Virus record (IMG/VR): IMGVR_UViG_3300005298_000038
Location: 1-8,816 of that record
Direction: 5' to 3' (one strand)
Length of the DNA stretch: 8,816 nt
Every line of letters starts with the position of its first letter. Positions within the stretch are counted from its first letter, which is position 1. Below the pieces are notes generated by a model. It saw nothing but the letters and a program-made list of their open reading frames with translations, ran no database searches and was not told the DNA's origin. This document shows, piece after piece, positions 1 through 8,816 of this stretch. The position numbers and the translations under genes were made by a program.

Positions 1-464
1 AAGGCACTACCGCTACATTCGACATGGTTAATCCCCGCGACTTGATGCAAAAGGAAAATCCCATTAAAGGGAATTGAAAGACATAAGTGGCAGAGATGGC
101 AGACTGAACGTCAGAGGGAACGATGCAAAAGGAAAATCCCATTAAAGGGGATTGAAAGATGTGAATACTCTGATGATTAGTTTGGTGCTGTTTGGTGTGA
201 GATGCAAAAGGAAAATCCCATTAAAGGGAATTGAAAGGCGTACTGCAAGGACGCTATTGCGATTTTAAATGCTCTCCCGATGCAAAAGGAAAATCCCATT
301 AAAGGGAATTGAAAGTTTCTTCGCGTCTCCGGCGCCATTTAGCTGAGTACCGATGCAAAAGGAAAATCCCATTAAAGGGAATTGAAAGCTATCATTCATA
401 ATAGCCACCCTGTTGGAAAAATTTATTGATGCAAAAGGAAAATCCCATTAAAGGGAATTGAAAG
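1..464 (+). CRISPR. CRISPR array, 37-bp repeat GATGCAAAAGGAAAATCCCATTAAAGGGAATTGAAAG (continues off the left edge)
   Basis: Repeats at 44-80, 122-158 (one A>G at 150), 201-237, 279-315, 352-388 and 428-464, plus a probable repeat end (AAG) at 1-3. Unique spacers of 40, 41, 42, 41, 36 and 39 bp. The 3' ATTGAAAG end and internal TCCC/GGGA hairpin are typical of archaeal class 1 arrays and suggest + orientation. Confidence 0.98.
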
Positions 465-1036
465 ACAGCTAGTTTGTTGAAGATTTCGTAAGCTAAGTCT
501 TCGCCTTTGCGGTAACTGCTGTGTAGCATCCAAGTTTGTATTAGCTTCTTTTTGTTTTTTGTTTTGTAATCAAATAAAAGTTTGAACGTTGACGGTTTGG
601 TTGCTTTTGAATCTATCCATTCTTCCGTAACGCCGTGGGGTACAACGTGGACTGGAACTTTGACTCCAGAGTTCAGATAGGATTTTTGGGCAAAATATGA
701 TGGCACTATTATGGCTGTTGCGTAGTCTGTTAGTTTAACCGCATATTCTGTTAGGTGATCTGAGTCTGCAACGTCTACGCCTATAAGCCTTTCAGGCTTG
801 CCTATTTTCGCTAAAAGTCTCCTTTCATAAACTTGCACTGGGTAGAAGTAAGGGTGTAGAAAAAAGACGGCTTTGGTTGAAAGCTGGGCTATTGGCATTA
901 TAACCGTTAAGGCGTTTTCATCAACCTTTTGCACGTAGAAGTATTTGCTTAATTCTTTTATGTGATGCTCTGAGATGAAGTGCCAGCTTACCCATTTATT
1001 TAAGGGGTAAACGTAGAATATGGGGTGTAACGGCAT
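392..1036 (-). CDS. Viral GT4/GT-B glycosyltransferase, C-terminally truncated by the CRISPR array (genuine part 1036-465)
   Basis: Motifs recalled from rudiviral glycosyltransferases: YVYP..VS..F....HIK.L, HP.FY, GVDVADSD, NSG.KVP, HS..RKG.DL. The last ~23 aa (FQFPLMGFSFCINK...) are the reverse-translated repeat 6 and spacer. The C-terminal E-x7-E nucleotide-sugar motif is missing. Confidence 0.85.
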   Translation of the reverse strand: MPLHPIFYVYPLNKWVSWHFISEHHIKELSKYFYVQKVDENALTVIMPIAQLSTKAVFFLHPYFYPVQVYERRLLAKIGKPERLIGVDVADSDHLTEYAVKLTDYATAIIVPSYFAQKSYLNSGVKVPVHVVPHGVTEEWIDSKATKPSTFKLLFDYKTKNKKKLIQTWMLHSSYRKGEDLAYEIFNKLAVFQFPLMGFSFCINKFFQQGGYYE

Positions 1037-1046
1037 ATCATGTCGT

Positions 1047-1061
1047 ATAAAAAAATGGGGG
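1047..1061 (-). terminator. Putative oligo-T terminator downstream of the MCP1 gene
   Basis: Minus strand CCCCCATTTTTTT about 30-45 nt after the MCP1 stop; archaeal U-tract type. A TTTAAA at 1063-1068 may be the TATA box of a leaderless GT transcript. Confidence 0.45.
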
Positions 1062-1091
1062 ATTTAAATTTTAGTTATGGCGTTGCCGTGT

Positions 1092-1469
1092 TTATGGCGT
1101 TGCAACGACTTTAACTATGATGGCGTTAGCGATGTCTGTAAGGTAGCCCTCGTCTAAGCCATAAGCGTTCTTAAAGTAGGCAATGAGTCCAGTGGAGATG
1201 TTGTCTGAGGCTACTCCGCCTTGACGCATTACATGCTTCCAAAGCTTAAGTGCGAAGGCGAGGTATGTCGCCCTTGTACCGCCTGTTACGCCTTTAGCGT
1301 CTAGGTAATCTCTCACCATGGCTCTGATGGTGTCGACAGCGTTTAAGCCTGCTTGGGCACGGGCTAGAGCGACTGATTGAACATCGGTGAACCTTGTACC
1401 TACTACTGTTGGGTTGTATTTCGCCTGATATTTCTGAAACATGTCAATGCCAGACTTATACAACGGCAT
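1092..1469 (-). CDS. Major capsid protein 1, SIRV2-like fold
   Basis: 125 aa. KYQAKYNPTV...KGVTGGTRATYLAFALKL...GLIAYFKNAYGLD..YL matches the recalled SIRV coat-protein pattern KWQAKF...NPTV...YGITGPNRAIYQGFGLK...GLKGYYISAFNAN..VL. Has an AGGTGA RBS (1476-1481) and its own TATA box. Confidence 0.9.
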   Translation of the reverse strand: MPLYKSGIDMFQKYQAKYNPTVVGTRFTDVQSVALARAQAGLNAVDTIRAMVRDYLDAKGVTGGTRATYLAFALKLWKHVMRQGGVASDNISTGLIAYFKNAYGLDEGYLTDIANAIIVKVVATP

Positions 1470-1652
1470 ACAATTTCACCTATTCTTTTCTACGCATGTA
1501 TATTGATATGATATTGTTCATAAAGGTTTGGCAAGGGGAAGGAAGCATATAGCTAAAGTATTCCATGATCATGGCTAACATCTTTAGTTATTTATGATTT
1601 GTGTAAAGCTTCGAAATCATTATATAGATGATTGTTTTAAGAATGGTTTGGC
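1470..1652. promoter_or_regulatory. Divergent promoter region between the two capsid genes
   Basis: Minus-strand BRE/TATA-like AAACCTTTATGAA at 1517-1529. Plus-strand TTATATA at 1620-1626, ~27 nt before ATG 1653 (leaderless), inside the inverted repeat AATCAT-N7-ATGATT. Central palindrome CCATGATCATGG at 1563-1574. Confidence 0.65.
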
Positions 1653-2108
1653 ATGACTGTTATAAAGTCTGAAGAGTTAAGTCTGAAAAAGCTGGTTGCA
1701 AGGTCTAATCCAACTACTTTAAGCGCTATTATTGCGGATTCTACTGAGGTGAAGCTTAAAAAGATGAGCGCTTGGGTTAGGATTTGCTACAGGCTGAACA
1801 GGGCTGTTAAACCTATTGTTGATAAGCATGGCATAACAGGGATGATAAGGGTGGGCTACTATGACTATTCTAAGTCTCTTTGGAAGTTTTTGACCAAGTA
1901 TCCTGAAAGTGTTTGGGATAGGTATATTAAGGCTAAGTTTGATTATTATGTGCAGGCGCATCAGCTTAATCCAGAGGTTTTGAAGGAAGTTACAGACGTA
2001 ACAGTTAAAACTATCAAGGAGATACTTAGTGAGGTGGGGGTGGAAAAGGTTGGGGGCGAGGAAACTGGAGATAGTGGTGCCAGCGAGGTTGTGGGAGAAA
2101 CTGAGTGA
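1653..2108 (+). CDS. Second SIRV2-fold capsid protein paralog (MCP2)
   Basis: Shares with MCP1 the motifs NPT, G[VI]TGxxRxxYxx[FY]xxxLWK and Y[FY]xxAxxL[DN]xxxLx[DE][IV]. Acidic C-terminal tail overlaps the next gene. Confidence 0.8.
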   Translation: MTVIKSEELSLKKLVARSNPTTLSAIIADSTEVKLKKMSAWVRICYRLNRAVKPIVDKHGITGMIRVGYYDYSKSLWKFLTKYPESVWDRYIKAKFDYYVQAHQLNPEVLKEVTDVTVKTIKEILSEVGVEKVGGEETGDSGASEVVGETE

Positions 2109-2223
2109 TTTTGAGGCTAAAACAGGTGTGCGTAAAGAAGATATATTGATGCGTGCAGTTATCAATATTATTGAAGGTGTGAGATGCCCGAAGTGTGGAA
2201 GCGTGTTTAGGGAGTTTGAGTAG
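2050..2223 (+). CDS. Ribbon-helix-helix DNA-binding protein with C-terminal CxxC
   Basis: RKLEIVVPARLWEKL...TGVRKEDILMRAVINII is a CopG-like strand-helix-helix pattern, followed by CPKC. Probable TTG start at 2050 after GGGGTGG; the ORF is open from 2029. Confidence 0.7.
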   Translation: MGARKLEIVVPARLWEKLSDFEAKTGVRKEDILMRAVINIIEGVRCPKCGSVFREFE

Positions 2224-2224
2224 G

Positions 2225-2530
2225 ATGAGTCTGTCTCAGAAGGTTTTAGCCCTTGTAGCTGGAATTGACAACCCGAAAGTAAGGTTCGACATAATGTCCA
2301 CCGTAAACTTCCTTTTCAATTTGTTTATAAGCGGAAGGGTTAATGAAGAACAGCTTAGAGGCGACCTGTTCGAAATTTGCTTAAGTGTGCTTACAGAATC
2401 TTCCCCAGAGTTGACAGAGGAAGAGATTAGAAAGAGAGCCAGCATGTTAGCTGATGAGCTTGTTAGAACCATGAAAATTGAAGGTGTTTCAAAAAGGGCA
2501 CTGGCAAGGTTTGCAAGACTGCCGTTCTAG
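2225..2530 (+). CDS. Hypothetical alpha-helical viral protein (101 aa)
   Basis: ATG at 2225 directly follows the upstream stop (TAG-G-ATG). Protein-like amphipathic helices. Ends convergent with the minus-strand operon. Confidence 0.75.
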   Translation: MSLSQKVLALVAGIDNPKVRFDIMSTVNFLFNLFISGRVNEEQLRGDLFEICLSVLTESSPELTEEEIRKRASMLADELVRTMKIEGVSKRALARFARLPF

Positions 2531-2536
2531 CTTGTT

Positions 2537-2752
2537 CTACGCTTTACCTTTTCTGGTTTTAATTTTCTTCAACAGCCAATGTAAAGCTACGATAAGGGAT
2601 ACTATATAGAGAATTCCAAAGGGGTTAATGCAGAGAAAGTAGAGAATCCATATGTTGACGGGTGTAGGCATTGGTATGACGGCGAAGATTGCTGGGATTA
2701 CGAAGTTTATGGTCAGTATTAGGATTAGGAAGGGTTTAGATTCCTTTTTCAT
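2537..2752 (-). CDS. Small membrane protein (about 2 TM helices, basic termini)
   Basis: Two long hydrophobic stretches flanked by Lys-rich ends. ATG at 2752 lies just after the Hjc stop; an alternative GTG start is at 2761. Confidence 0.6.
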   Translation of the reverse strand: MKKESKPFLILILTINFVIPAIFAVIPMPTPVNIWILYFLCINPFGILYIVSLIVALHWLLKKIKTRKGKA

Positions 2753-2753
2753 T

Positions 2754-3053
2754 TTAAACACCGATGAACTGGTATTTTCTGCCGTCTTTTTTCATGTAGG
2801 CTACTGCTTTACATGTGTAGGTTCCTTCCAAGGCTTTTAGCTCCTTGAAACGCTGTTGAAGTTTGGATGTGTCTTTTGGCGCCTCTTCCTTTTTGCATTG
2901 AACCAGCCAGATTTCTCTGCGGTCTGGGAATATGGCGATTAGGTCTGCTGGGGACAGGCTTCTGGCTGAGCGGACAACTATGGCGGCTCCTTGTTTCAGA
3001 AGCTCGTCTTTAGCTTTTAACTCTATGAAATAGCCAGTCTTATACTTGCTCAA
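2754..3053 (-). CDS. hjc: Archaeal-type Holliday junction resolvase (Hjc family, PD-(D/E)xK)
   Basis: G..IE.K....L...G...VVRSA.S.SPADLIAI......LVQCK matches the Hjc pattern, with Q in the E-x-K position. Rudiviruses are known to encode Hjc-type resolvases. Confidence 0.85.
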   Translation of the reverse strand: MSKYKTGYFIELKAKDELLKQGAAIVVRSARSLSPADLIAIFPDRREIWLVQCKKEEAPKDTSKLQQRFKELKALEGTYTCKAVAYMKKDGRKYQFIGV

Positions 3054-3774
3054 GGTTTATCCCTCTGAGGTTTTTCCCTTTGACTTGTATTCCGCTTGCC
3101 TTTAGTAATCTGATTAGGCGGGTTGTTTGTTCTAGACTTGGTTCGGGAAGTTGTATTAGGTTGGGTTTGCTGTTATAGCCTATCCATACGTATTCTGGTT
3201 CTGTTTCAGTTATCATTTTGAAGAATGGGTCTAAATCAAAATCTAGTATTGGTTCTATAGTTATGACTTTACGTGGAAATATTATCTCTTTGAAGGCTTT
3301 ATGTCTTCTTGTCGGTGGAGGTGCACGTGATATAGCTCTATAATTATCATCTCTATTGGTCTCCAACGTTTCTATTATTATCGCATTATCAACCCCATCG
3401 TTAATAATTTCTGGGACACTTCTTGGACTTGTTGTTGATAGTGTTTCCCAATCTTTACTTTGAAAATAGAACACCTTATCTGAGCAACGTTTTTGATGCA
3501 TTGAAATATAATGAATAATTTTACACATATAACCTAGTGAACAAAAAGCTATGTCTCCGTCTCCACATACGAAAACTATTTTTGAACTAGGAATTCTTTT
3601 AAGCCTTTCAGGATGATAATGCGGAGTGTAATTGTAACAGTCTATGCAATTATGTTTACCCCATCTTTTAAGCTGTCTTTGGAATGAAACTTTACAGTAA
3701 ATACAATCGTGATAGCATCCTACATAAGGATTCCACGTTTTAGTTTCAGCGTACATATGGGTTCTGGTTTGCAT
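3040..3774 (-). CDS. DUF5131 (phage Gp37/Gp68)-like radical-SAM protein
   Basis: TWNPYVGCYHDCIYC (CxxxCxxC), VFVCGDGD, FYFQSK, TIEPIL and VWIGYNS correspond in order to the conserved blocks of DUF5131-like proteins. Confidence 0.75.
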   Translation of the reverse strand: MQTRTHMYAETKTWNPYVGCYHDCIYCKVSFQRQLKRWGKHNCIDCYNYTPHYHPERLKRIPSSKIVFVCGDGDIAFCSLGYMCKIIHYISMHQKRCSDKVFYFQSKDWETLSTTSPRSVPEIINDGVDNAIIIETLETNRDDNYRAISRAPPPTRRHKAFKEIIFPRKVITIEPILDFDLDPFFKMITETEPEYVWIGYNSKPNLIQLPEPSLEQTTRLIRLLKASGIQVKGKNLRGINLEQV

Positions 3775-3801
3775 ACTTCAACACTCCCTTAATCCTCTCC
3801 A

Positions 3802-3975
3802 TTATACTGGTTTTACCCATCCTTTTAGAATTAGCCTAAATAGAGCGATGCAGACCATTGGTGACCATGCGATGTTATGCTTTAAGCATTCTCTGTTGAA
3901 GGGACACTTGTTATATATTGGGCATTTTGAAGGAATCGCTTCTGGAATAAGGTATGATTCGCTTAGTTTAACCAT
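3802..3975 (-). CDS. Small Cys-rich hypothetical protein
   Basis: AGGTGA RBS ~8 nt before ATG 3975; four Cys; overlaps the upstream stop as in an operon. Confidence 0.6.
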   Translation of the reverse strand: MVKLSESYLIPEAIPSKCPIYNKCPFNRECLKHNIAWSPMVCIALFRLILKGWVKPV

Positions 3976-4168
3976 GTTGACCATCACCTAGTAGAATTTT
4001 GAGGATTTCTGCTACTTTATATTTTCTTGAGTTGTTTATGATTTCGTTGTAGCAGTCTAGGCATAGGTTTAGTTTTATTTTGATGTTTTTTGGGAAGTGT
4101 ACTGTGATTTCGTACCATGCTATGGTTATGTCTCCGCATCGGTCACACATTACATCCAAATTAACCAC
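3968..4168 (-). CDS. Small zinc-finger protein (CDRC...CLDC)
   Basis: Two CxxC pairs; coupled to both neighbours. The start could be TTG 4159. Confidence 0.7.
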   Translation of the reverse strand: MVNLDVMCDRCGDITIAWYEITVHFPKNIKIKLNLCLDCYNEIINNSRKYKVAEILKILLGDGQHG

Positions 4169-4349
4169 CTTGCCTTCTGCATTTTTTAATGTAGGCGTAT
4201 GGTGTCATGTATTGGAGTTTTGTGCATGTTTCATTGGGTTTTTTAAGGATTAGGGCGCATATGGGATATGCATTTGTTCGGGTTCTGTAGATGCGTCGCC
4301 ATGCACATCTGCCGTTGTAAGTGCAGATTGGAAGACAGTTAGGATTCAT
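4161..4349 (-). CDS. Small basic Cys-rich hypothetical protein
   Basis: Six Cys; ATG 4 nt after the upstream stop with a GGGGGT RBS-like element. Confidence 0.6.
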   Translation of the reverse strand: MNPNCLPICTYNGRCAWRRIYRTRTNAYPICALILKKPNETCTKLQYMTPYAYIKKCRRQGG

Positions 4350-4352
4350 ATG

Positions 4353-4883
4353 CTACCCCCTTCTCAGTCCGTTTGCGTATTTTGATTGGCTTACGCCTAG
4401 TGAGCCTAATGTTCGCATGATTATGTAGTTTGCTAGTTTCTCGTTTTTTTGGAGGTCTTTTTTGTTTATGTAGAATTTTTGGTTTTGTAGGTCGAAGTAT
4501 AGGGGTATTCTGCCCTGTGTGTGGTGGTTTTTGCGTTTGGCTATGACGTGTAGGGTTTTTCCTTTCCATGTTATTTTACGCATGTAGAAGCCTTCCTCAG
4601 GGTATCTGTGTTGTAGCCTTTCAACGTATATGCGTAGGTCTGTTTCTGTTAGGTGTGGAGCGTTTGATTTTTTGGTTATTATGAAGTCGGCTTTGTATCT
4701 TCCGTATTGGCTTCCGCCTTCAACTATAGGCGTGTGTTCTTTGAATATTTCGATCAGTCTTAGTCCTAGCCCGTGTTCTTCATCGTGACATGATTTGCAT
4801 AGGCGTATGTATTCCAGTGTGCTGTAGTCGGTGATGTGAATGTATAGGGGTGGTTTGGTTGTTCCACATTTCTCGCATTGCAC
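4353..4883 (-). CDS. Protein with N-terminal HNH-like zinc module and unknown basic C-terminal domain
   Basis: CEKC...LYIH...LCKSCHDEEH resembles a degenerate HNH Zn-finger. GGTGA RBS before the GTG start. First gene behind a TTTATAAA promoter. Confidence 0.7.
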   Translation of the reverse strand: MQCEKCGTTKPPLYIHITDYSTLEYIRLCKSCHDEEHGLGLRLIEIFKEHTPIVEGGSQYGRYKADFIITKKSNAPHLTETDLRIYVERLQHRYPEEGFYMRKITWKGKTLHVIAKRKNHHTQGRIPLYFDLQNQKFYINKKDLQKNEKLANYIIMRTLGSLGVSQSKYANGLRRG

Positions 4884-4903
4884 CCTTAATCACCATATAT
4901 ATC

Positions 4904-4956
4904 TTATGTGTTTATGGTTTATAAACTTTATGTATTCTGGAGGTAAAATTTAATAA
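4904..4956. promoter_or_regulatory. Bidirectional promoter with three CATAA boxes around a TTTATAAA TATA box
   Basis: TTATG at 4904-4908, 4912-4916 and 4928-4932; TTTATAAA at 4918-4925 (minus operon); TTTAATAA at 4949-4956 (plus gene). Confidence 0.65.
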
Positions 4957-4990
4957 ATCAAAAACACATGTAAGGTAGTTGGGATGATGT

Positions 4991-5263
4991 ATGAGTGACA
5001 TCGTGGTTGGTTTGCTGAAGGCGTTTGCTCCTACTGTTGCGGAGAAGTTGTTAAGTGTTATTGGGGATCGGAGGATCAGGCGTGATGATTTGAATTTGAT
5101 TATTATTAGTTTGTTGGCGGAGCAGAATCATAATATTGTTAAGAGTATGGATGAGATGTGTAATAGGCTGTATAAGCTGAATGAGGAGATGAATACTGTT
5201 TTGCGTGAGCTAAAAATAACTAATGAGGGCATTGCTGTTCTTTTGAAGCGGACTGAGCGTTAA
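4991..5263 (+). CDS. Hypothetical 90-aa protein with amphipathic N-terminus and C-terminal coiled coil
   Basis: Own TATA box and GGGATG RBS-like element. Heptad pattern in MDEMCNRLYKLNEEMNTVLRELKITNEGIAVLL. Confidence 0.7.
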   Translation: MSDIVVGLLKAFAPTVAEKLLSVIGDRRIRRDDLNLIIISLLAEQNHNIVKSMDEMCNRLYKLNEEMNTVLRELKITNEGIAVLLKRTER

Positions 5264-5423
5264 GTTTCTGTTTTATTGCTGGTATGAAGAGTTTCGGGTT
5301 TTCTAGGAAAATGTCTGTGATTGTTTTTAATAGTTTATAGTTTGAAATGTTTAGTTCCTTGGCTATTGATCTGAATTTTCTGTACTGTTTCTTGTTAAGG
5401 TGGACTGTAACGTCTATACTCAT
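5220..5423 (-). CDS. Ribbon-helix-helix DNA-binding protein
   Basis: DVTVHLNKKQYRKFRSIAKELNISNYKLLKTITDIFL is an RHH pattern. ATGA coupling with the upstream gene. Confidence 0.7.
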   Translation of the reverse strand: MSIDVTVHLNKKQYRKFRSIAKELNISNYKLLKTITDIFLENPKLFIPAIKQKLNAQSASKEQQCPH

Positions 5424-5638
5424 ATGCCTTCACCGTTCTTAAACTTGAAAATGAATGTACATCCGTTGCTGCGTGGAATAATTTCCAAGTCGTCCACGTT
5501 TTGCAACAGTTTCTCTAGGTCTTGTTTGTTTACAATAAAATCCACAACCATTACAAATTTTATTTCGTTTTGACCTCGGTAACGGTAAATCAACCTGTAG
5601 TCAGCAAGTGTTTGCAAAGCTTTAAACAAATCCTCCAT
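5420..5638 (-). CDS. Hypothetical small alpha/beta protein
   Basis: GGAGAGTGA RBS upstream; coupled to the downstream RHH gene. Confidence 0.65.
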   Translation of the reverse strand: MEDLFKALQTLADYRLIYRYRGQNEIKFVMVVDFIVNKQDLEKLLQNVDDLEIIPRSNGCTFIFKFKNGEGI

Positions 5639-5694
5639 TGCGTTTCACTCTCCTTTTTCTTTATGATTTCATGAAACCCGTTCAGTCCAGTTGC

Positions 5695-6033
5695 TCATTT
5701 GAATGTCCCTATGGTTTTCTGTTTCGGGCTTAATGCTTGTCTGAACAGCTTACTTCTTTTCTGCCTTTTTTCTAGAATTTCTGGTCTTGGAAGGTAGTTT
5801 CCTTGTTCTTGGATTTTTTGTCGCATTCTGCGTATGGTTTCTGGGTGTGTAGCCCTGTAGAGGAAGTCTCTTCGGAATTCCTTTGGGATGTTGATTTTAT
5901 CAACTAGTTCCCAGTATAGGAGCATAAGTAGCTTATCGTTGGAGCGTGCATCTGGGTAATGGGCTAGCAAGTAGCGTACTGCCGTTTCCGTGTTTGATAG
6001 AGTATTTTTTAGCTGTTCTTGTGTTTCAGTCAT
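5695..6033 (-). CDS. Conserved hypothetical viral protein (P.AR..D..L...YW...PETIRR.RQKIQ....LP type)
   Basis: Motif pattern recalled from uncharacterised phage and archaeal virus proteins; basic, possibly DNA-binding. AGGTGAGG RBS. Confidence 0.75.
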   Translation of the reverse strand: MTETQEQLKNTLSNTETAVRYLLAHYPDARSNDKLLMLLYWELVDKINIPKEFRRDFLYRATHPETIRRMRQKIQEQGNYLPRPEILEKRQKRSKLFRQALSPKQKTIGTFK

Positions 6034-6056
6034 GCTTATTCCTCACCTTCCCTTTT

Positions 6057-6147
6057 TTGGCGGGAGTTAGCCAACGGTCGCCTCAACCAGCTTAGGTTGG
6101 CAACCCATACGCAGAAAAGTGCTTTTGGGCTGTCCTCCTTTCGCCAA
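6057..6147 (-). ncRNA. Putative structured RNA element (multi-stem) in an intergenic gap
   Basis: About 55% GC (50/91) in an AT-rich genome. Nested complementary arms on the minus strand: UUGGCG/CGCCAA plus GGAG/CUCC, CAGCCC/GGGUUG and GCCAAC/GUUGGC. Confidence 0.4.
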
Positions 6148-6158
6148 TAGCAATCCCT

Positions 6159-6353
6159 CTATTGTCTTGCAGTGTAATCACCTTGGGTTGACTTTACAAC
6201 GAATCTCACCAAAACAAAGTCTGCACCCTTTAATCGTGCCTCATAAATCGCCAACGCAACTTCTTCTGCTCTCGCATTATACATTTTGTTGTAGTAAACA
6301 CAGTTCTCATTGTTATATCCAGCTAACACCACAACAATCATGTCTTCGCTCAC
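6159..6353 (-). CDS. Hypothetical small protein
   Basis: Strong GGAGGTGAGG RBS before the GTG start; in operon orientation. Confidence 0.65.
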   Translation of the reverse strand: MSEDMIVVVLAGYNNENCVYYNKMYNARAEEVALAIYEARLKGADFVLVRFVVKSTQGDYTARQ

Positions 6354-6377
6354 AGCTATTCCTCACCTCCAGCGCAT

Positions 6378-6599
6378 TTATGTTATTCGTTTTCCTTTTG
6401 CTTCTAGGCGTAGGCTTTTTAGGTAGCATAGGGGGCTGTCTTTCTGCTTACATGTGTATGCTAGGCTACAGTCCACTGGTTTGCCGTTTACAAGTTCGCC
6501 GTTAATCAATTTTTGGTTTACCAAGGTTATGCGGGCTTCTAGGCGAGATGCTGGACAGAAGGTTTTAATCTCGTAATAATGGAGTTCGCTCATTGTCAT
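6378..6599 (-). CDS. Small Cys-containing hypothetical protein
   Basis: Four Cys (C...Cx5Cx7C); ATGA overlap with the upstream gene. Confidence 0.65.
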   Translation of the reverse strand: MTMSELHYYEIKTFCPASRLEARITLVNQKLINGELVNGKPVDCSLAYTCKQKDSPLCYLKSLRLEAKGKRIT

Positions 6600-6835
6600 T
6601 CCCTTAACTCTTGTTTAGTTTCTTTCTCCTCTTGTTTACCTTCGTATATTGTAACCAAAATAGCGTCGTTTTCACGTTTTTTGTCAAGGTCAATTTCGAC
6701 GTTTTTGAGGGTGATTCCATGAACCCTTTGGCAGTTGTTGCAGATTAAGTATAGGATTTTATCTTGCGGTTTAGTATATTTCGGCGGGTAATGTAAGTAG
6801 AATAAGGTAGAACCGCAAATGCATTTTAACCTCAT
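6596..6835 (-). CDS. Zinc-ribbon protein (CICG...CNNC) with charged tail
   Basis: CxC plus CxxC; GGAGG RBS upstream. Confidence 0.7.
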   Translation of the reverse strand: MRLKCICGSTLFYLHYPPKYTKPQDKILYLICNNCQRVHGITLKNVEIDLDKKRENDAILVTIYEGKQEEKETKQELRE

Positions 6836-6944
6836 TTTCTTCCTCCTTTCAATTTTTGGTTGTATTTGGCGATTAGGAAACAGTAGGATTCAAGGTCTTA
6901 CCTTTTTCTTTGATCTCTGGCGATATCTTTAGTATTACCATGTT

Positions 6945-7139
6945 TTAGCCCTCTAGTTCATGTTTATGGTTTTCAACATATTCCCGTAAGGCTTCATTTA
7001 CGATTATGTAGAATTTGCGTGTGGGACTTACGAATCGTTTCTTTACTATAGTCCATATTTTGTTGTATAGTTCCTCTTCAACATATAGATGTATTTTTTT
7101 GTAGGCTGTTTTCGCAGTTTGGCTTTTATTTTTGGGCAT
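6945..7139 (-). CDS. Ribbon-helix-helix transcriptional regulator
   Basis: KKIHLYVEEELYNKIW...IVNEALREYV is an RHH signature. GAGGTGA RBS precedes ATG 7139. First gene behind the second CATAA-boxed promoter. Confidence 0.8.
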   Translation of the reverse strand: MPKNKSQTAKTAYKKIHLYVEEELYNKIWTIVKKRFVSPTRKFYIIVNEALREYVENHKHELEG

Positions 7140-7161
7140 GCGGTTCACCTCTGAGAATAGG

Positions 7162-7220
7162 TTATGGTTTTATGTATTTATAAATCTTATGGTGTTTATA
7201 AGTGTAAAGGCTTAAAAATA
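7162..7220. promoter_or_regulatory. Bidirectional promoter with three CATAA boxes around a TTTATAAA TATA box
   Basis: TTATG at 7162-7166, 7170-7174 and 7187-7191; TTTATAAA at 7177-7184; plus-strand AAAGGCTTAAAAA (BRE/TATA-like) at 7206-7218. Confidence 0.65.
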
Positions 7221-7253
7221 TTGAAAGGTCAGTTGTTAAGGTGAGGTGGTTGA

Positions 7254-7526
7254 ATGGTTTGGGAAGTTGTGAGGGGAATACTCGCTGGGATAGTTTCAGG
7301 GGCTGTTACGGCGTTGCTGGGATACGCCAAGACGGGCGGATTGGAAAGCTTTGAACCCAAAAAGGCTGTTCAAACGATCATAGTGGGTGCGGTAGTGGGC
7401 GGTTTCGCTGGAGCTTGGGGTGTAACGTATCAGGAAGCCTACGAATACCTCGGGAGCGTTGGCGCTATAACTTTGATTGAATATGTTAAGAAGTCCATCG
7501 TGAAGAGGCTGTTTCCGCCAGAATAA
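7254..7526 (+). CDS. Small Gly-rich membrane protein (holin-like or virion envelope candidate)
   Basis: 2-3 hydrophobic helices with GxxxG motifs (GILAGIVSG, GAVVGGFAG) and a basic C-terminus. GAGGTGG RBS, own promoter and T-rich terminator. Confidence 0.75.
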   Translation: MVWEVVRGILAGIVSGAVTALLGYAKTGGLESFEPKKAVQTIIVGAVVGGFAGAWGVTYQEAYEYLGSVGAITLIEYVKKSIVKRLFPPE

Positions 7527-7527
7527 A

Positions 7528-7540
7528 ACCCTTTCTTTTT
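7528..7540 (+). terminator. Pyrimidine/T-rich terminator after the membrane protein gene
   Basis: CCCTTTCTTTTT right after the stop. An opposing A8 tract at 7615-7622 could terminate the convergent minus-strand transcript. Confidence 0.45.
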
Positions 7541-7651
7541 ACATGTGTAGAAGTTGCCACGAATTTCCATGAGAAGTATAAAATTTTTGTACTGGAACTA
7601 CAATTTTTTAGAGTAAAAAAAAGAGTCAGAGTTTATTATTTATTTTTTGTT

Positions 7652-8002
7652 TTAGGCTTCGTTACCTTGGTATGTCTGGGCTATGTTGTCTTTGAGTTGT
7701 TCGTACTTTTCAAACCAGCCATGTTCGTAGAGTGTTACAATTTTATGGCACGGGCGACATATCCACATTCCAATATAGGGTTTATCTGTTATCCAATGAT
7801 GGTACTCTAGTCTACGTGGTTTTCCGCATAGTTCACACTTATCAGGTTTTGGTCTTCTAGGCTTTTCAAGTCTAATACATCTAACCTTACTACCTTCCCT
7901 AATGCATATTATCCACTTCCGAGCATATCTACGTTTATACTCTAAGTCTTTATCTCTGTTCCGAATCTTCCATAGTTTATTGTATTCTTTTTTGCTTATC
8001 AT
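7652..8002 (-). CDS. HNH-family endonuclease-like protein with basic N-terminus
   Basis: CELCG...LEYHHW.......WICRPCH is a Zn-binding HNH-like module. TAA-ATG coupling with the upstream gene. Confidence 0.7.
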   Translation of the reverse strand: MISKKEYNKLWKIRNRDKDLEYKRRYARKWIICIREGSKVRCIRLEKPRRPKPDKCELCGKPRRLEYHHWITDKPYIGMWICRPCHKIVTLYEHGWFEKYEQLKDNIAQTYQGNEA

Positions 8003-8425
8003 TTAAAGAACCTCGTAGACTTCTCCACTTATCCATTTTAGAACTTGATATTTTTGGAAGCTGTTTAGCCATTTTTGTATTGTTCTTTCGTCATCTCCTC
8101 TGATGGCGGCTATTGCTTCAACTATATGTTTTCTTGGGATAAGCTGTTGCGGGAATATTGAGTCATATCCAAACTTTTCTCTAAGGTAAGCTTTGACCTG
8201 ATTCCATACTTTGAAGACTCGTGGTTGAGGGTTCGCTGAATTGAGGGTAAGCTGTTTTGTGTGATTTTGTGTGTGTGTTGCCAGCCAAACACCTAAAGCC
8301 TGCTCAACTTCATAGCTGATGGCTCCATGAAACTTTCCATATTTTGCTAAAGCAAGACGTTTCAGTTCTTCAACAAGACTACGTGGAAGGTAAACTTTTA
8401 GTTGAACTTTATCTTCAGCGTTCAT
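8003..8425 (-). CDS. Two-domain DNA-binding protein: N-terminal RHH and C-terminal winged-helix-like domain
   Basis: KVQLKVYLPRSLVEELKRLA...ISYEVEQAL (RHH), a THTQNHT linker, then IPRKHIVEAIAAIRGDDERTIQKWL...LKW...YEV (wHTH-like). GAGGTGG RBS before ATG 8425; the ORF is open from 8440. Confidence 0.75.
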   Translation of the reverse strand: MNAEDKVQLKVYLPRSLVEELKRLALAKYGKFHGAISYEVEQALGVWLATHTQNHTKQLTLNSANPQPRVFKVWNQVKAYLREKFGYDSIFPQQLIPRKHIVEAIAAIRGDDERTIQKWLNSFQKYQVLKWISGEVYEVL

Positions 8426-8440
8426 CCTTCCACCTCGCAT

Positions 8441-8496
8441 AGATTAGTACTAATTCGTGTTTTAGTACTTTAGTACTAATCTTAGTGATATAGTAC
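8441..8496. repeat. 13-bp perfect inverted repeat with TAGTAC iterations (operator-like)
   Basis: AGATTAGTACTAA (8441-8453) and TTAGTACTAATCT (8470-8482). TAGTAC at 8445, 8463, 8471 and 8491. Confidence 0.8.
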
Positions 8497-8507
8497 CATT
8501 TCATGTA

Positions 8508-8542
8508 TTTATTGTTTATTGTTTATTGTTTGTTTATTTATT
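8508..8542. repeat. Tandem TTTATTG repeats
   Basis: (TTTATTG)x3 at 8508-8528, then TTTG and TTTATTTATT. Confidence 0.8.
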
Positions 8543-8816
8543 AGTAAGACAAAAGAAAAGAAAAAAAAGCTCAAAATAAGCTCCTTTTCCCATTTTTCAA
8601 ACACTTCTCTTAAAACCACTACACACACAAATTCACACAAATTTTATGTGTATTTTGTTGTGTATTTTTTTGGTAAGGTTTTTATGCTCAAGTACGCCAT
8701 TCTCTAGTGGTTAAGCCTATGATTTGTCCCCTGTTAAGTGCATGCAAATTAAAGGTAACCCACGAGCACTACTCAGGCACCTGCTCCAACATTTCGAAAG
8801 ACGCCTACAAAGACTG

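What the first reader, a model, noticed from the sequence alone, without database searches (positions are those of the whole stretch)
389..560. CRISPR array fused base-precisely into a core viral glycosyltransferase gene: the virus sits where the next spacer should be
Seen: the last repeat (428-464) is intact, and base 465 is already inside the GT reading frame (...FNKLA|). This removes the C-terminal part of the enzyme, with no leader, degenerate trailer repeat or target duplication visible. Known: spacer-protospacer recombination and prophage insertion into CRISPR arrays occur in bacteria, and some archaeal viruses carry their own arrays. Inferred alternatives: (a) crossover between a host spacer (465-~505) and its protospacer, giving a virus-CRISPR cointegrate; (b) viral DNA captured as a giant spacer; (c) an array inserted into the viral gene; (d) an assembler jump through a spacer identical to the virus. 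Even (d) would link this virus to the host that owns the repeat.
Basis: partly seen in the sequence, partly recalled or inferred. Interest (0 to 1): 0.85.

Follow-up and report, generated by a model that had tools for sequence, protein, structure and literature searches.

The report
CRISPR array joined to virus: probable misassembly
A host CRISPR array and an archaeal filamentous virus are joined exactly at a repeat edge in this contig, but the same sequencing data also contain the virus with its gene intact, so the join is most likely an assembly error through a spacer identical to the virus. It still links the virus to an unidentified host.

Summary
Six 37-nt CRISPR repeats (44-464) end at base 464, and from base 465 the contig is an archaeal filamentous virus. 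It enters a rudivirus-type glycosyltransferase (GT) gene that stops after 190 of about 360 residues.

The biological reading is probably wrong. The window is a whole JGI contig from a Great Boiling Spring enrichment metagenome.
- A MEGAHIT assembly that appears to be built from the same reads holds the same virus, 100% identical over 7,151 nt. The identity stops exactly at base 465, and that contig then continues with the intact GT.
- The rest of the virus is also in the JGI sample.
- JGI, MEGAHIT and one Logan assembly break at one identical base about 328 nt past the junction. The second Logan run stops 10 nt short of it. So the intact-virus branch is a short dead end that assemblers tend to clip, which leaves the array as the only neighbour of the shared segment.
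- The only other assemblies that show the junction are k=31 Logan assemblies. Their k is shorter than any spacer in this array.

Best explanation (about 0.8): a normal host spacer identical to the GT gene caused a chimeric join. A true spacer-protospacer recombinant (about 0.1) needs read-level tests.

What is real: an array with a spacer against this virus, and a virus from an uncultivated lineage only distantly related to Rudiviridae. The host was not identified.

The parts
1..43 (+). Contig start: either a 43-nt partial or whole spacer, or the last 3 nt (AAG) of a seventh repeat plus a 40-nt spacer
   Evidence: The other spacers are 36-42 nt, so 43 nt is slightly too long. 'AAG' matches the repeat's end.
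44..464 (+). CRISPR array: six 37-nt repeats (44-80, 122-158, 201-237, 279-315, 352-388, 428-464) and five spacers (81-121, 159-200, 238-278, 316-351, 389-427). Transcribed on the + strand, judged from the 3' ATTGAAAG handle.
   Evidence: Rfam gives only sub-threshold CRISPR-DR17/DR25 hits. The exact repeat occurs in no GTDB species-representative genome, in no other IMG/VR contig, and a shorter core gave only two single-copy chance hits.
465..503 (+). Presumed spacer S, identical to a protospacer in the viral GT gene. The left edge is exact. The right edge (about 500-506) is inferred from the spacer sizes in this array.
   Evidence: Identity between the window and the intact virus (L005) begins exactly at 465. 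In the intact virus the three bases before it are TCA. This is compatible with the TCN PAM recalled for Sulfolobales type I systems (own knowledge, not tested).
465..1036 (-). N-terminal half (residues 1-190 of about 360) of a rudivirus-type GT-B glycosyltransferase
   Evidence: phrog_2170 E=1.9e-12. 30-34% identity to Rudiviridae GTs. 74% identity to the closest metagenomic full-length GT. The intact continuation is seen in L005 and L026.
392..464 (-). Spurious 23-residue tail of the ORF, read through the last repeat into spacer 389-427
   Evidence: The JGI annotation calls no gene here.
1092..1469 (-). Major capsid protein 1 (SIRV2-type fold)
   Evidence: Pfam PF12193 Sulf_coat_C E=7.8e-17. 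31-35% identity to Rudiviridae coat proteins.
1653..2108 (+). Major capsid protein 2 (paralogue)
   Evidence: Pfam PF12193 E=7.1e-13.
2195..8816 (.). Remainder of the viral fragment: small ORFs syntenic with related uncultivated viruses, including a 244-aa CxxxCxxC protein at 3040-3774(-), zinc-ribbon/HNH-like proteins at 4353-4883(-) and 7652-8002(-), and a protein at 8003-8440(-) with a weak Arc-like repressor match
   Evidence: tblastn synteny with L012, L013, L014.

Best explanation
The contig is an assembly chimera. Two real molecules in one hot-spring enrichment sample share about 36-42 nt. One is a host CRISPR array that carries a normal spacer S, acquired from the GT gene of this virus. 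The other is the intact linear virus. In a de Bruijn graph with k below the spacer length, S is one shared node with two entries (array repeat, or the viral GT C-terminal part) and two exits (viral GT N-terminal part, or the next repeat). Read coverage of the virus is low. There is a hole about 328 nt beyond S, so the viral entry branch is a 324-nt dead end of the kind assemblers clip as a tip. Once it is clipped, the array is the only remaining entry, and the contig runs array - S - virus. Shown: the array; the truncation; the exact boundary; the intact path and the rest of the virus in assemblies that appear to share the reads; the shared break point. Inferred: that S is followed by another repeat in the true array, and that tip-clipping plus a dropout of that edge produced the join.
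For: (1) ENA ERZ27289264 contig k141_1826 (L005) is 100% identical to window 465-7615 (7,151 nt, no mismatch). Identity stops exactly at 465, and the contig continues 324 nt in frame as an intact GT that aligns with homologues across the junction. (2) The rest of the GT and the downstream genes lie on ERZ27289264 k141_62396 (L026), which abuts L005 with a gap of about 4 nt. JGI contig Ga0071330_1044438 from the window's own sample, and Logan SRR350589_53272, end at the very same base as L026. SRR4028098 ends 10 nt short. The assemblies therefore appear to share one read set. The whole virus is present in it, and the intact-virus branch next to S is a 324-nt dead end. (3) The only other assemblies with the junction are Logan k=31 contigs (L006 = window 437-1658). 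L006's left end is the first 31-mer shared with another repeat-spacer junction, so they carry no information longer than 31 nt, which is shorter than any spacer here. (4) MEGAHIT runs straight through the intact path without a fork at 465. This is expected if k-mers longer than S that join the repeat to viral DNA beyond S do not exist (inference). (5) The virus is fragmented in the Logan runs: 1.1-2.9 kb contigs, and no contig holds the whole MCP2 gene. This indicates low coverage. (6) None of 12 related viral loci carries this repeat, and none of the seven closest relatives checked has any CRISPR-like array. (7) Published work lists chimeric contigs among the assembly problems caused by CRISPR repeats (PMC6617893).
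Against: The toy k=31 graph shows that the Logan contig requires the edge S->next repeat to be missing as well. I had to assume this was a low-coverage dropout or graph cleaning. No contig showing S followed by a repeat was found. The JGI assembler passed through six 37-nt repeats, so it used k>=39 or read threading. If its final k exceeded the spacer length with no carry-over from smaller k, the junction would need real reads. I could not establish which assembler or k JGI used. No reads could be inspected.
Confidence: 0.8

Rival explanations
1. Real spacer-protospacer recombinant. Homologous recombination between host spacer S and the viral protospacer joined viral DNA to the array, either as a cointegrate (both junctions present) or as a linear by-product.
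For: The junction lies exactly at the repeat/spacer boundary, with 100% identity on the viral side. Two Logan runs and the JGI assembly all reproduce it. Such recombination is recalled from work in staphylococci (own knowledge; the paper was seen only as a cited title among the hits and was not read).
Against: All assemblies appear to derive from one library, so they are not independent. A cointegrate gives the same k=31 graph as a chimera and would still need the S->repeat edge to be missing. MEGAHIT shows no fork at 465. At the low coverage seen, a rare recombinant is unlikely to dominate. A single crossover with a linear viral genome would break the chromosome.
Confidence: 0.1
2. Virus-borne array, or an array inserted into the viral GT gene. 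A variant of the virus carries the CRISPR array in place of the GT C-terminus.
For: Some archaeal viruses carry mini-arrays (own knowledge). GC content is similar on both sides, about 0.39-0.42 against 0.37-0.43.
Against: No related virus has the repeat or any CRISPR-like array. With at least six repeats it is larger than the viral mini-arrays I recall. No spacer matches related viruses. It would destroy a GT that is conserved in every relative retrieved with it. The intact genome is present in the same reads.
Confidence: 0.04
3. Viral DNA ligated to a repeat by the adaptation machinery ('giant spacer' or half-site integration intermediate; reader's b).
For: The junction is at the spacer-side end of a repeat, where integrase chemistry acts (established knowledge of Cas1-Cas2).
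Against: The orientation from the ATTGAAAG handle puts at least six repeats between the leader and this junction, whereas acquisition is leader-proximal. The viral part is 100% identical over 7.1 kb to the free virus in the sample. That points to a very recent event, yet at least five or six later spacers lie on the leader side of it. No repeat is seen at the other end of the contig.
Confidence: 0.03

Closest known systems
Chimeric metagenomic contigs caused by CRISPR repeats and by spacer-protospacer identity
   Same: A short-read assembly joins host array sequence to a virus through a segment shorter than or close to k. The boundary falls exactly at a repeat edge, the array sits at a contig end, and the intact virus is present in the same data.
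   Different: Here a specific cause can be named: a coverage hole 328 nt away turns the correct branch into a clip-able tip. Read-level proof is still missing.
Spacer-protospacer recombination between phages and CRISPR loci in staphylococci (own knowledge; seen only as a cited title)
   Same: It would give exactly this junction: repeat, then spacer, then phage DNA onward from the protospacer.
   Different: That case was shown experimentally in bacteria with circular or concatemeric phage DNA. Here the virus is archaeal and probably linear, and there is no evidence beyond 31-mers.
Prophage integration into CRISPR repeats in Streptococcus pyogenes (bioRxiv 10.1101/2020.10.09.333658; title and abstract seen)
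   Same: Viral DNA lies inside a CRISPR array.
   Different: As I recall that work, it is site-specific integrase-mediated insertion with the attachment site inside the repeat. Here the last repeat is whole, the break is inside a viral core gene, and no integrase domain was found among the ten window proteins scanned.
Rudiviridae / Lipothrixviridae (Ligamenvirales) of Sulfolobales
   Same: SIRV2-type capsid protein (PF12193) and a conserved GT-B glycosyltransferase. Two capsid paralogues, as in lipothrixviruses.
   Different: Only 30-35% identity to any isolate. It comes from a hot (about 77-86 C), near-neutral spring (near-neutral pH reported for later samplings; PMC9246946). It belongs to a large uncultivated clade seen only in metagenomes. 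The host is unknown.

Membership tests
CRISPR array | Three or more near-identical direct repeats of 23-47 nt, separated by unique spacers of similar length | tested here: met
   Six 37-nt repeats (five identical, one with 1 mismatch). Unique spacers of 36-42 nt.
CRISPR array | Repeat belongs to a described repeat family | tested here: inconclusive
   Rfam CRISPR-DR17 scores 23.4 bits against a gathering score of 42, and DR25 scores 22.3 against 36. The 3' ATTGAAAG handle and the similarity of the 3' 25 nt to Sulfolobales repeats rest on my own knowledge.
CRISPR array | Adjacent leader and cas genes | not testable with these tools
   The contig begins inside the array. The exact repeat is absent from GTDB representative genomes and from other IMG/VR contigs.
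CRISPR array | Spacers match mobile elements | tested here: inconclusive
   Only the presumed spacer 465-~503 matches a virus. The other spacers gave no hit to the virus, to its relatives, or (three tested) to IMG/VR.
GT-B glycosyltransferase (rudivirus core GT, phrog_2170) | Both Rossmann-like domains, including the C-terminal nucleotide-sugar-binding domain | tested here: not met
   The window copy stops at residue 190 of about 360 (profile position 205 of 374). The same virus in L005 and L026 has the C-terminal part with the conserved SRGGGFEHPP block.
Ligamenvirales (Adnaviria) virus | SIRV2-fold major capsid protein | tested here: met
   PF12193 hits at E=7.8e-17 and 7.1e-13, both above the curated cut-off.
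Ligamenvirales (Adnaviria) virus | Linear dsDNA genome with terminal inverted repeats | not tested
   Only fragments are available (window, L005, L026).
Spacer-protospacer recombinant / cointegrate | Physical continuity from the repeat through the whole spacer into viral DNA beyond it, on single molecules | not testable with these tools
   No reads are available. The only extra support is k=31 contigs. The MEGAHIT contig shows the intact path without a fork.
Spacer-protospacer recombinant / cointegrate | Reciprocal junction (viral GT C-terminal part - spacer - repeat) | tested here: inconclusive
   It was not found in IMG/VR. The JGI metagenome scan for the spacer found only the window. ENA and Logan contigs cannot be searched by DNA.
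Prophage integrated in a CRISPR repeat | Attachment site within the repeat and a phage integrase | tested here: not met
   The last repeat is complete and the break lies in a viral gene. No integrase domain was found among the ten window proteins scanned.
Virus-encoded CRISPR (mini-)array | Array flanked on both sides by viral genes, and present in related viral genomes | tested here: not met
   Only one flank is viral. None of the 12 related loci has the repeat, and the seven closest relatives checked show no CRISPR-like array.

The most novel reading that the evidence does not exclude
The junction is physical. In this hot-spring enrichment, a crenarchaeal-type CRISPR array has recombined through a spacer with its matching protospacer in a filamentous archaeal virus. 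The result would be an array-virus hybrid molecule. As far as I know, this would be the first natural archaeal example of spacer-mediated virus-CRISPR recombination, with possible transfer of arrays by virions.
Probability: 0.1. Interest if true: 0.7.

Novelty: not a real feature. Interest (0 to 1): 0.15.

Why it matters
If the fusion were real, it would show spacer-mediated recombination between an archaeal virus and a host array in nature. That would bear on how CRISPR loci move and on how viruses are damaged or escape.

As it stands, the value is practical.
- IMG/VR entry IMGVR_UViG_3300005298_000038 should be treated as virus only from base 465 onward. Bases 1-464 are host DNA.
- The truncated GT is not a viral feature.
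- The contig does give a direct virus-host link: the array has a spacer against the GT gene. This concerns an uncultivated Ligamenvirales lineage from Great Boiling Spring whose host is otherwise unknown.
- The case also shows that agreement between assemblies of the same reads is not independent confirmation.

Tried and rejected
- Exact repeat in GTDB genomes: none. A 21-nt core of the repeat gave only two single-copy chance hits without arrays. The host was not identified.
- Exact repeat and the 35-nt junction-proximal segment in IMG/VR: only the window itself.
- The 30-nt segment 465-494 in JGI metagenome contigs: only the window.
- A 36-nt probe from the intact GT C-terminal part in IMG/VR: no hit.
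- Megablast of the viral part against deposited phage and archaeal-virus genomes: no match. Only protein-level similarity to Rudiviridae was found.
- Protospacers for spacers 238-278, 316-351 and 389-427 in IMG/VR: none. The PAM could therefore not be derived empirically.
- All six spacers against the virus, its right-hand part and the related loci: nothing above chance.
- Exact-protein look-up of the 214-aa read-through ORF and of the 145-aa ORF at 8003-8440: not on record.
- Cluster look-up of the partial GT products: not in the collection.
- Literature search for the run accessions and the assembly method of 3300005298: sample identity found, assembler not found.
- Considered and rejected: using the Logan contigs as independent confirmation. 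They appear to come from the same library and use k=31.

Full report
**What the window is.** The 8,816-nt window is a complete contig: IMG/VR UViG 3300005298_000038, which is JGI Ga0071330_1068202. Metagenome 3300005298 is an in-situ corn-stover enrichment in Great Boiling Spring, Nevada (bioRxiv 10.1101/2022.12.01.518715; owner listed in PMC9599585).

**Checking the observation.** A 37-nt repeat, GATGCAAAAGGAAAATCCCATTAAAGGGAATTGAAAG, occurs six times between 44 and 464. Five copies are identical and one has a single mismatch. The five intervening spacers are unique and 36-42 nt long. The last copy (428-464) is perfect. The repeat has a small 4-bp hairpin and ends in ATTGAAAG, the usual 8-nt crRNA handle (established knowledge). 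So the array is read on the + strand, its leader lies left of base 1, and base 465 is on the leader-distal side. Rfam gives only sub-threshold hits to CRISPR-DR17/DR25.

From base 465 the minus strand encodes residues 1-190 of a glycosyltransferase. Codon 191 straddles the junction. The ORF then reads through the repeat for 23 meaningless residues. Residues 7-190 match positions 7-205 of the 374-position PHROG GT profile and the N-terminal half of rudivirus GTs such as SIRV2 ORF356. More than a hundred metagenomic relatives are about 345-385 aa long, and the alignment shows that the whole C-terminal domain is missing.

**The surroundings.** Next to the GT lie two divergent genes for SIRV2-type capsid proteins (PF12193, E=7.8e-17 and 7.1e-13). 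The other ORFs are small and are syntenic with uncultivated viral contigs. The nearest isolates are Rudiviridae, at 30-35% protein identity. No nucleotide match exists in the phage collection. So the viral part is a fragment of an uncultivated Ligamenvirales-like virus. In its relatives the order is MCP2 - MCP1 - GT - (293-aa gene) - 438-aa gene, with the GT in mid-genome. None of the relatives carries the repeat or any CRISPR-like array.

**The decisive comparison.** An exact-protein look-up of MCP1 found the same virus in other assemblies. ENA ERZ27289264 contig k141_1826 (L005, 7,477 nt) is 100% identical to window 465-7615. The identity ends exactly at base 465. Beyond that point L005 continues for 324 nt, in frame, as an intact GT (...FNKLA-VERSDIALVV...) that aligns with homologues. 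In the intact virus the bases preceding 465 are ...CTCCTTTCA.

A homologue search with the downstream 438-aa gene of a relative led to ERZ27289264 k141_62396 (L026). It starts with the last 69 residues of the GT and carries the downstream genes. L005 and L026 abut with a gap of about 4 nt.

JGI contig Ga0071330_1044438, from the window's own sample, and Logan contig SRR350589_53272 end at exactly the same base as L026. SRR4028098 ends 10 nt short. Three conclusions follow.
- These assemblies appear to derive from one read set, so their agreement is not independent evidence.
- The complete virus, including the 'missing' part, is in the sample.
- There is a coverage hole about 328 nt from the junction, which leaves the intact-virus branch as a 324-nt dead end.

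**Why the junction appears in three assemblies.** Two Logan runs (k=31) contain the junction (L006 = window 437-1658). L006's left end is the first 31-mer that is also present at 53-83 (repeat plus 'ACA'), so it is a graph branch. These contigs therefore prove only that reads contain the repeat abutting at least 30 nt of virus-identical sequence. Any ordinary spacer would give that.

A toy k=31 graph shows the following. With array (repeat-S-repeat) and virus (X-S-virus) both present, S is an isolated 39-nt unitig. The observed contig arises only if the edges X->S and S->repeat are both absent. The first is explained by tip-clipping of the 324-nt dead end. The second must be assumed: low coverage or graph cleaning.

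Low coverage is supported by how fragmented the virus is in Logan. Contigs are 1.1-2.9 kb, and no contig holds the whole MCP2 gene. MEGAHIT, which iterates k up to 141, passes X-S-virus with no fork at 465. That is expected if no k-mers longer than S link the repeat to viral DNA beyond S.

**Weighing the alternatives.**
- A true cointegrate would give the same k=31 graph as a chimera. It gains nothing from the Logan contigs, and it predicts a fork in MEGAHIT.
- A 'giant spacer' conflicts with the array's polarity. At least six repeats lie between the leader and this junction, yet the viral part is 100% identical to the free virus.
- A virus-borne array conflicts with the relatives, with the array's size, and with the loss of a GT that is conserved in every relative retrieved with it.
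- Weakness of the favoured explanation: I could not inspect reads, could not find the array's continuation (S followed by a repeat), and could not learn the JGI assembler's k. The JGI assembler did thread six 37-nt repeats.

I put the chimera at about 0.8, a real recombinant at about 0.1, and the rest together below 0.1.

**What remains true and useful.** The array owner has (or had) a spacer identical to at least 30 nt of this virus's GT gene. The adjacent TCA is compatible with the TCN-type PAMs I recall for Sulfolobales type I systems (own knowledge; not testable here, because no other spacer found a protospacer). The 3' half of the repeat resembles Sulfolobales-type repeats (own knowledge), which suggests a member of the Thermoproteota.

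**Comparison with known cases.**
- Chimeric contigs are listed among the assembly problems caused by CRISPR repeats (PMC6617893).
- Spacer-protospacer recombination in staphylococci is recalled from my own knowledge; the paper appeared only as a cited title.
- Prophage integration into CRISPR repeats in S. pyogenes (bioRxiv 10.1101/2020.10.09.333658) is the real-biology analogue. Its defining features were either not met or could not be tested here.

**Verdict.** The fusion is most likely not a real feature. Interest is low, apart from the virus-host link and the caution about the IMG/VR entry.

Noticed in passing
L005 7477 / L026 1 (about 328 nt left of window base 465 in viral coordinates): Three assemblies (JGI, MEGAHIT, Logan SRR350589) break at one identical base inside the GT C-terminal region (...TCAAAAAAGCGG | about 4 nt | GTGTTGCC...). 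SRR4028098 breaks 10 nt earlier. This is a shared coverage hole, and it shows the assemblies are not independent.
   Followed up: partly
window 3040-3774 (-): A 244-aa protein with a CxxxCxxC motif near its N-terminus (…GCYHDCIYCK…), reminiscent of radical-SAM-like or Gp37/Gp68-type phage proteins. There is no Pfam hit at E<0.01 and only weak PHROG hits. It is 77% identical to a protein in related virus L014.
   Followed up: no
window 8256-8276 / 8621-8641: A 21-nt inverted repeat (95% complementary, 344 nt apart) made of TG/CA-rich sequence, in the most AT-rich part of the contig (GC about 0.29) near its right end. It could be a regulatory or near-terminal feature.
   Followed up: no
L013 3483-4366: A related virus (IMGVR_UViG_3300005573_000154) has more than 20 copies of an AGYGAGCT motif at a strict 17-nt (or multiple of 17) period over about 900 nt. 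This is an unusual periodic array of unknown role.
   Followed up: no
window 1-3: The contig begins with AAG, which matches the last 3 nt of the repeat, followed by 40 nt. This suggests a seventh repeat just off the contig's end, and a read-limited end rather than a graph-branch end.
   Followed up: no
L025, L007 (ENA ERZ27289263): A second assembly holds a strain of the same virus that is about 99% identical (23 mismatches and 4 gaps in 2.4 kb). The virus therefore occurs in more than one sample or library from this study.
   Followed up: partly
proteins P0048, P0082, P0086, P0149, P0159, P0204, P0217: Homologues of the viral GT and of the 438-aa downstream protein are deposited inside MAGs labelled Archaeoglobales, Omnitrophota, Chloroflexi, Ignisphaera, Caldarchaeum and Bathyarchaeia. 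Viral contigs of this clade are probably being binned into unrelated MAGs.
   Followed up: no
window 392-1036: The JGI annotation calls no gene over the truncated GT, although a 214-aa ORF exists. Presumably this is because the ORF overlaps the CRISPR array.
   Followed up: no
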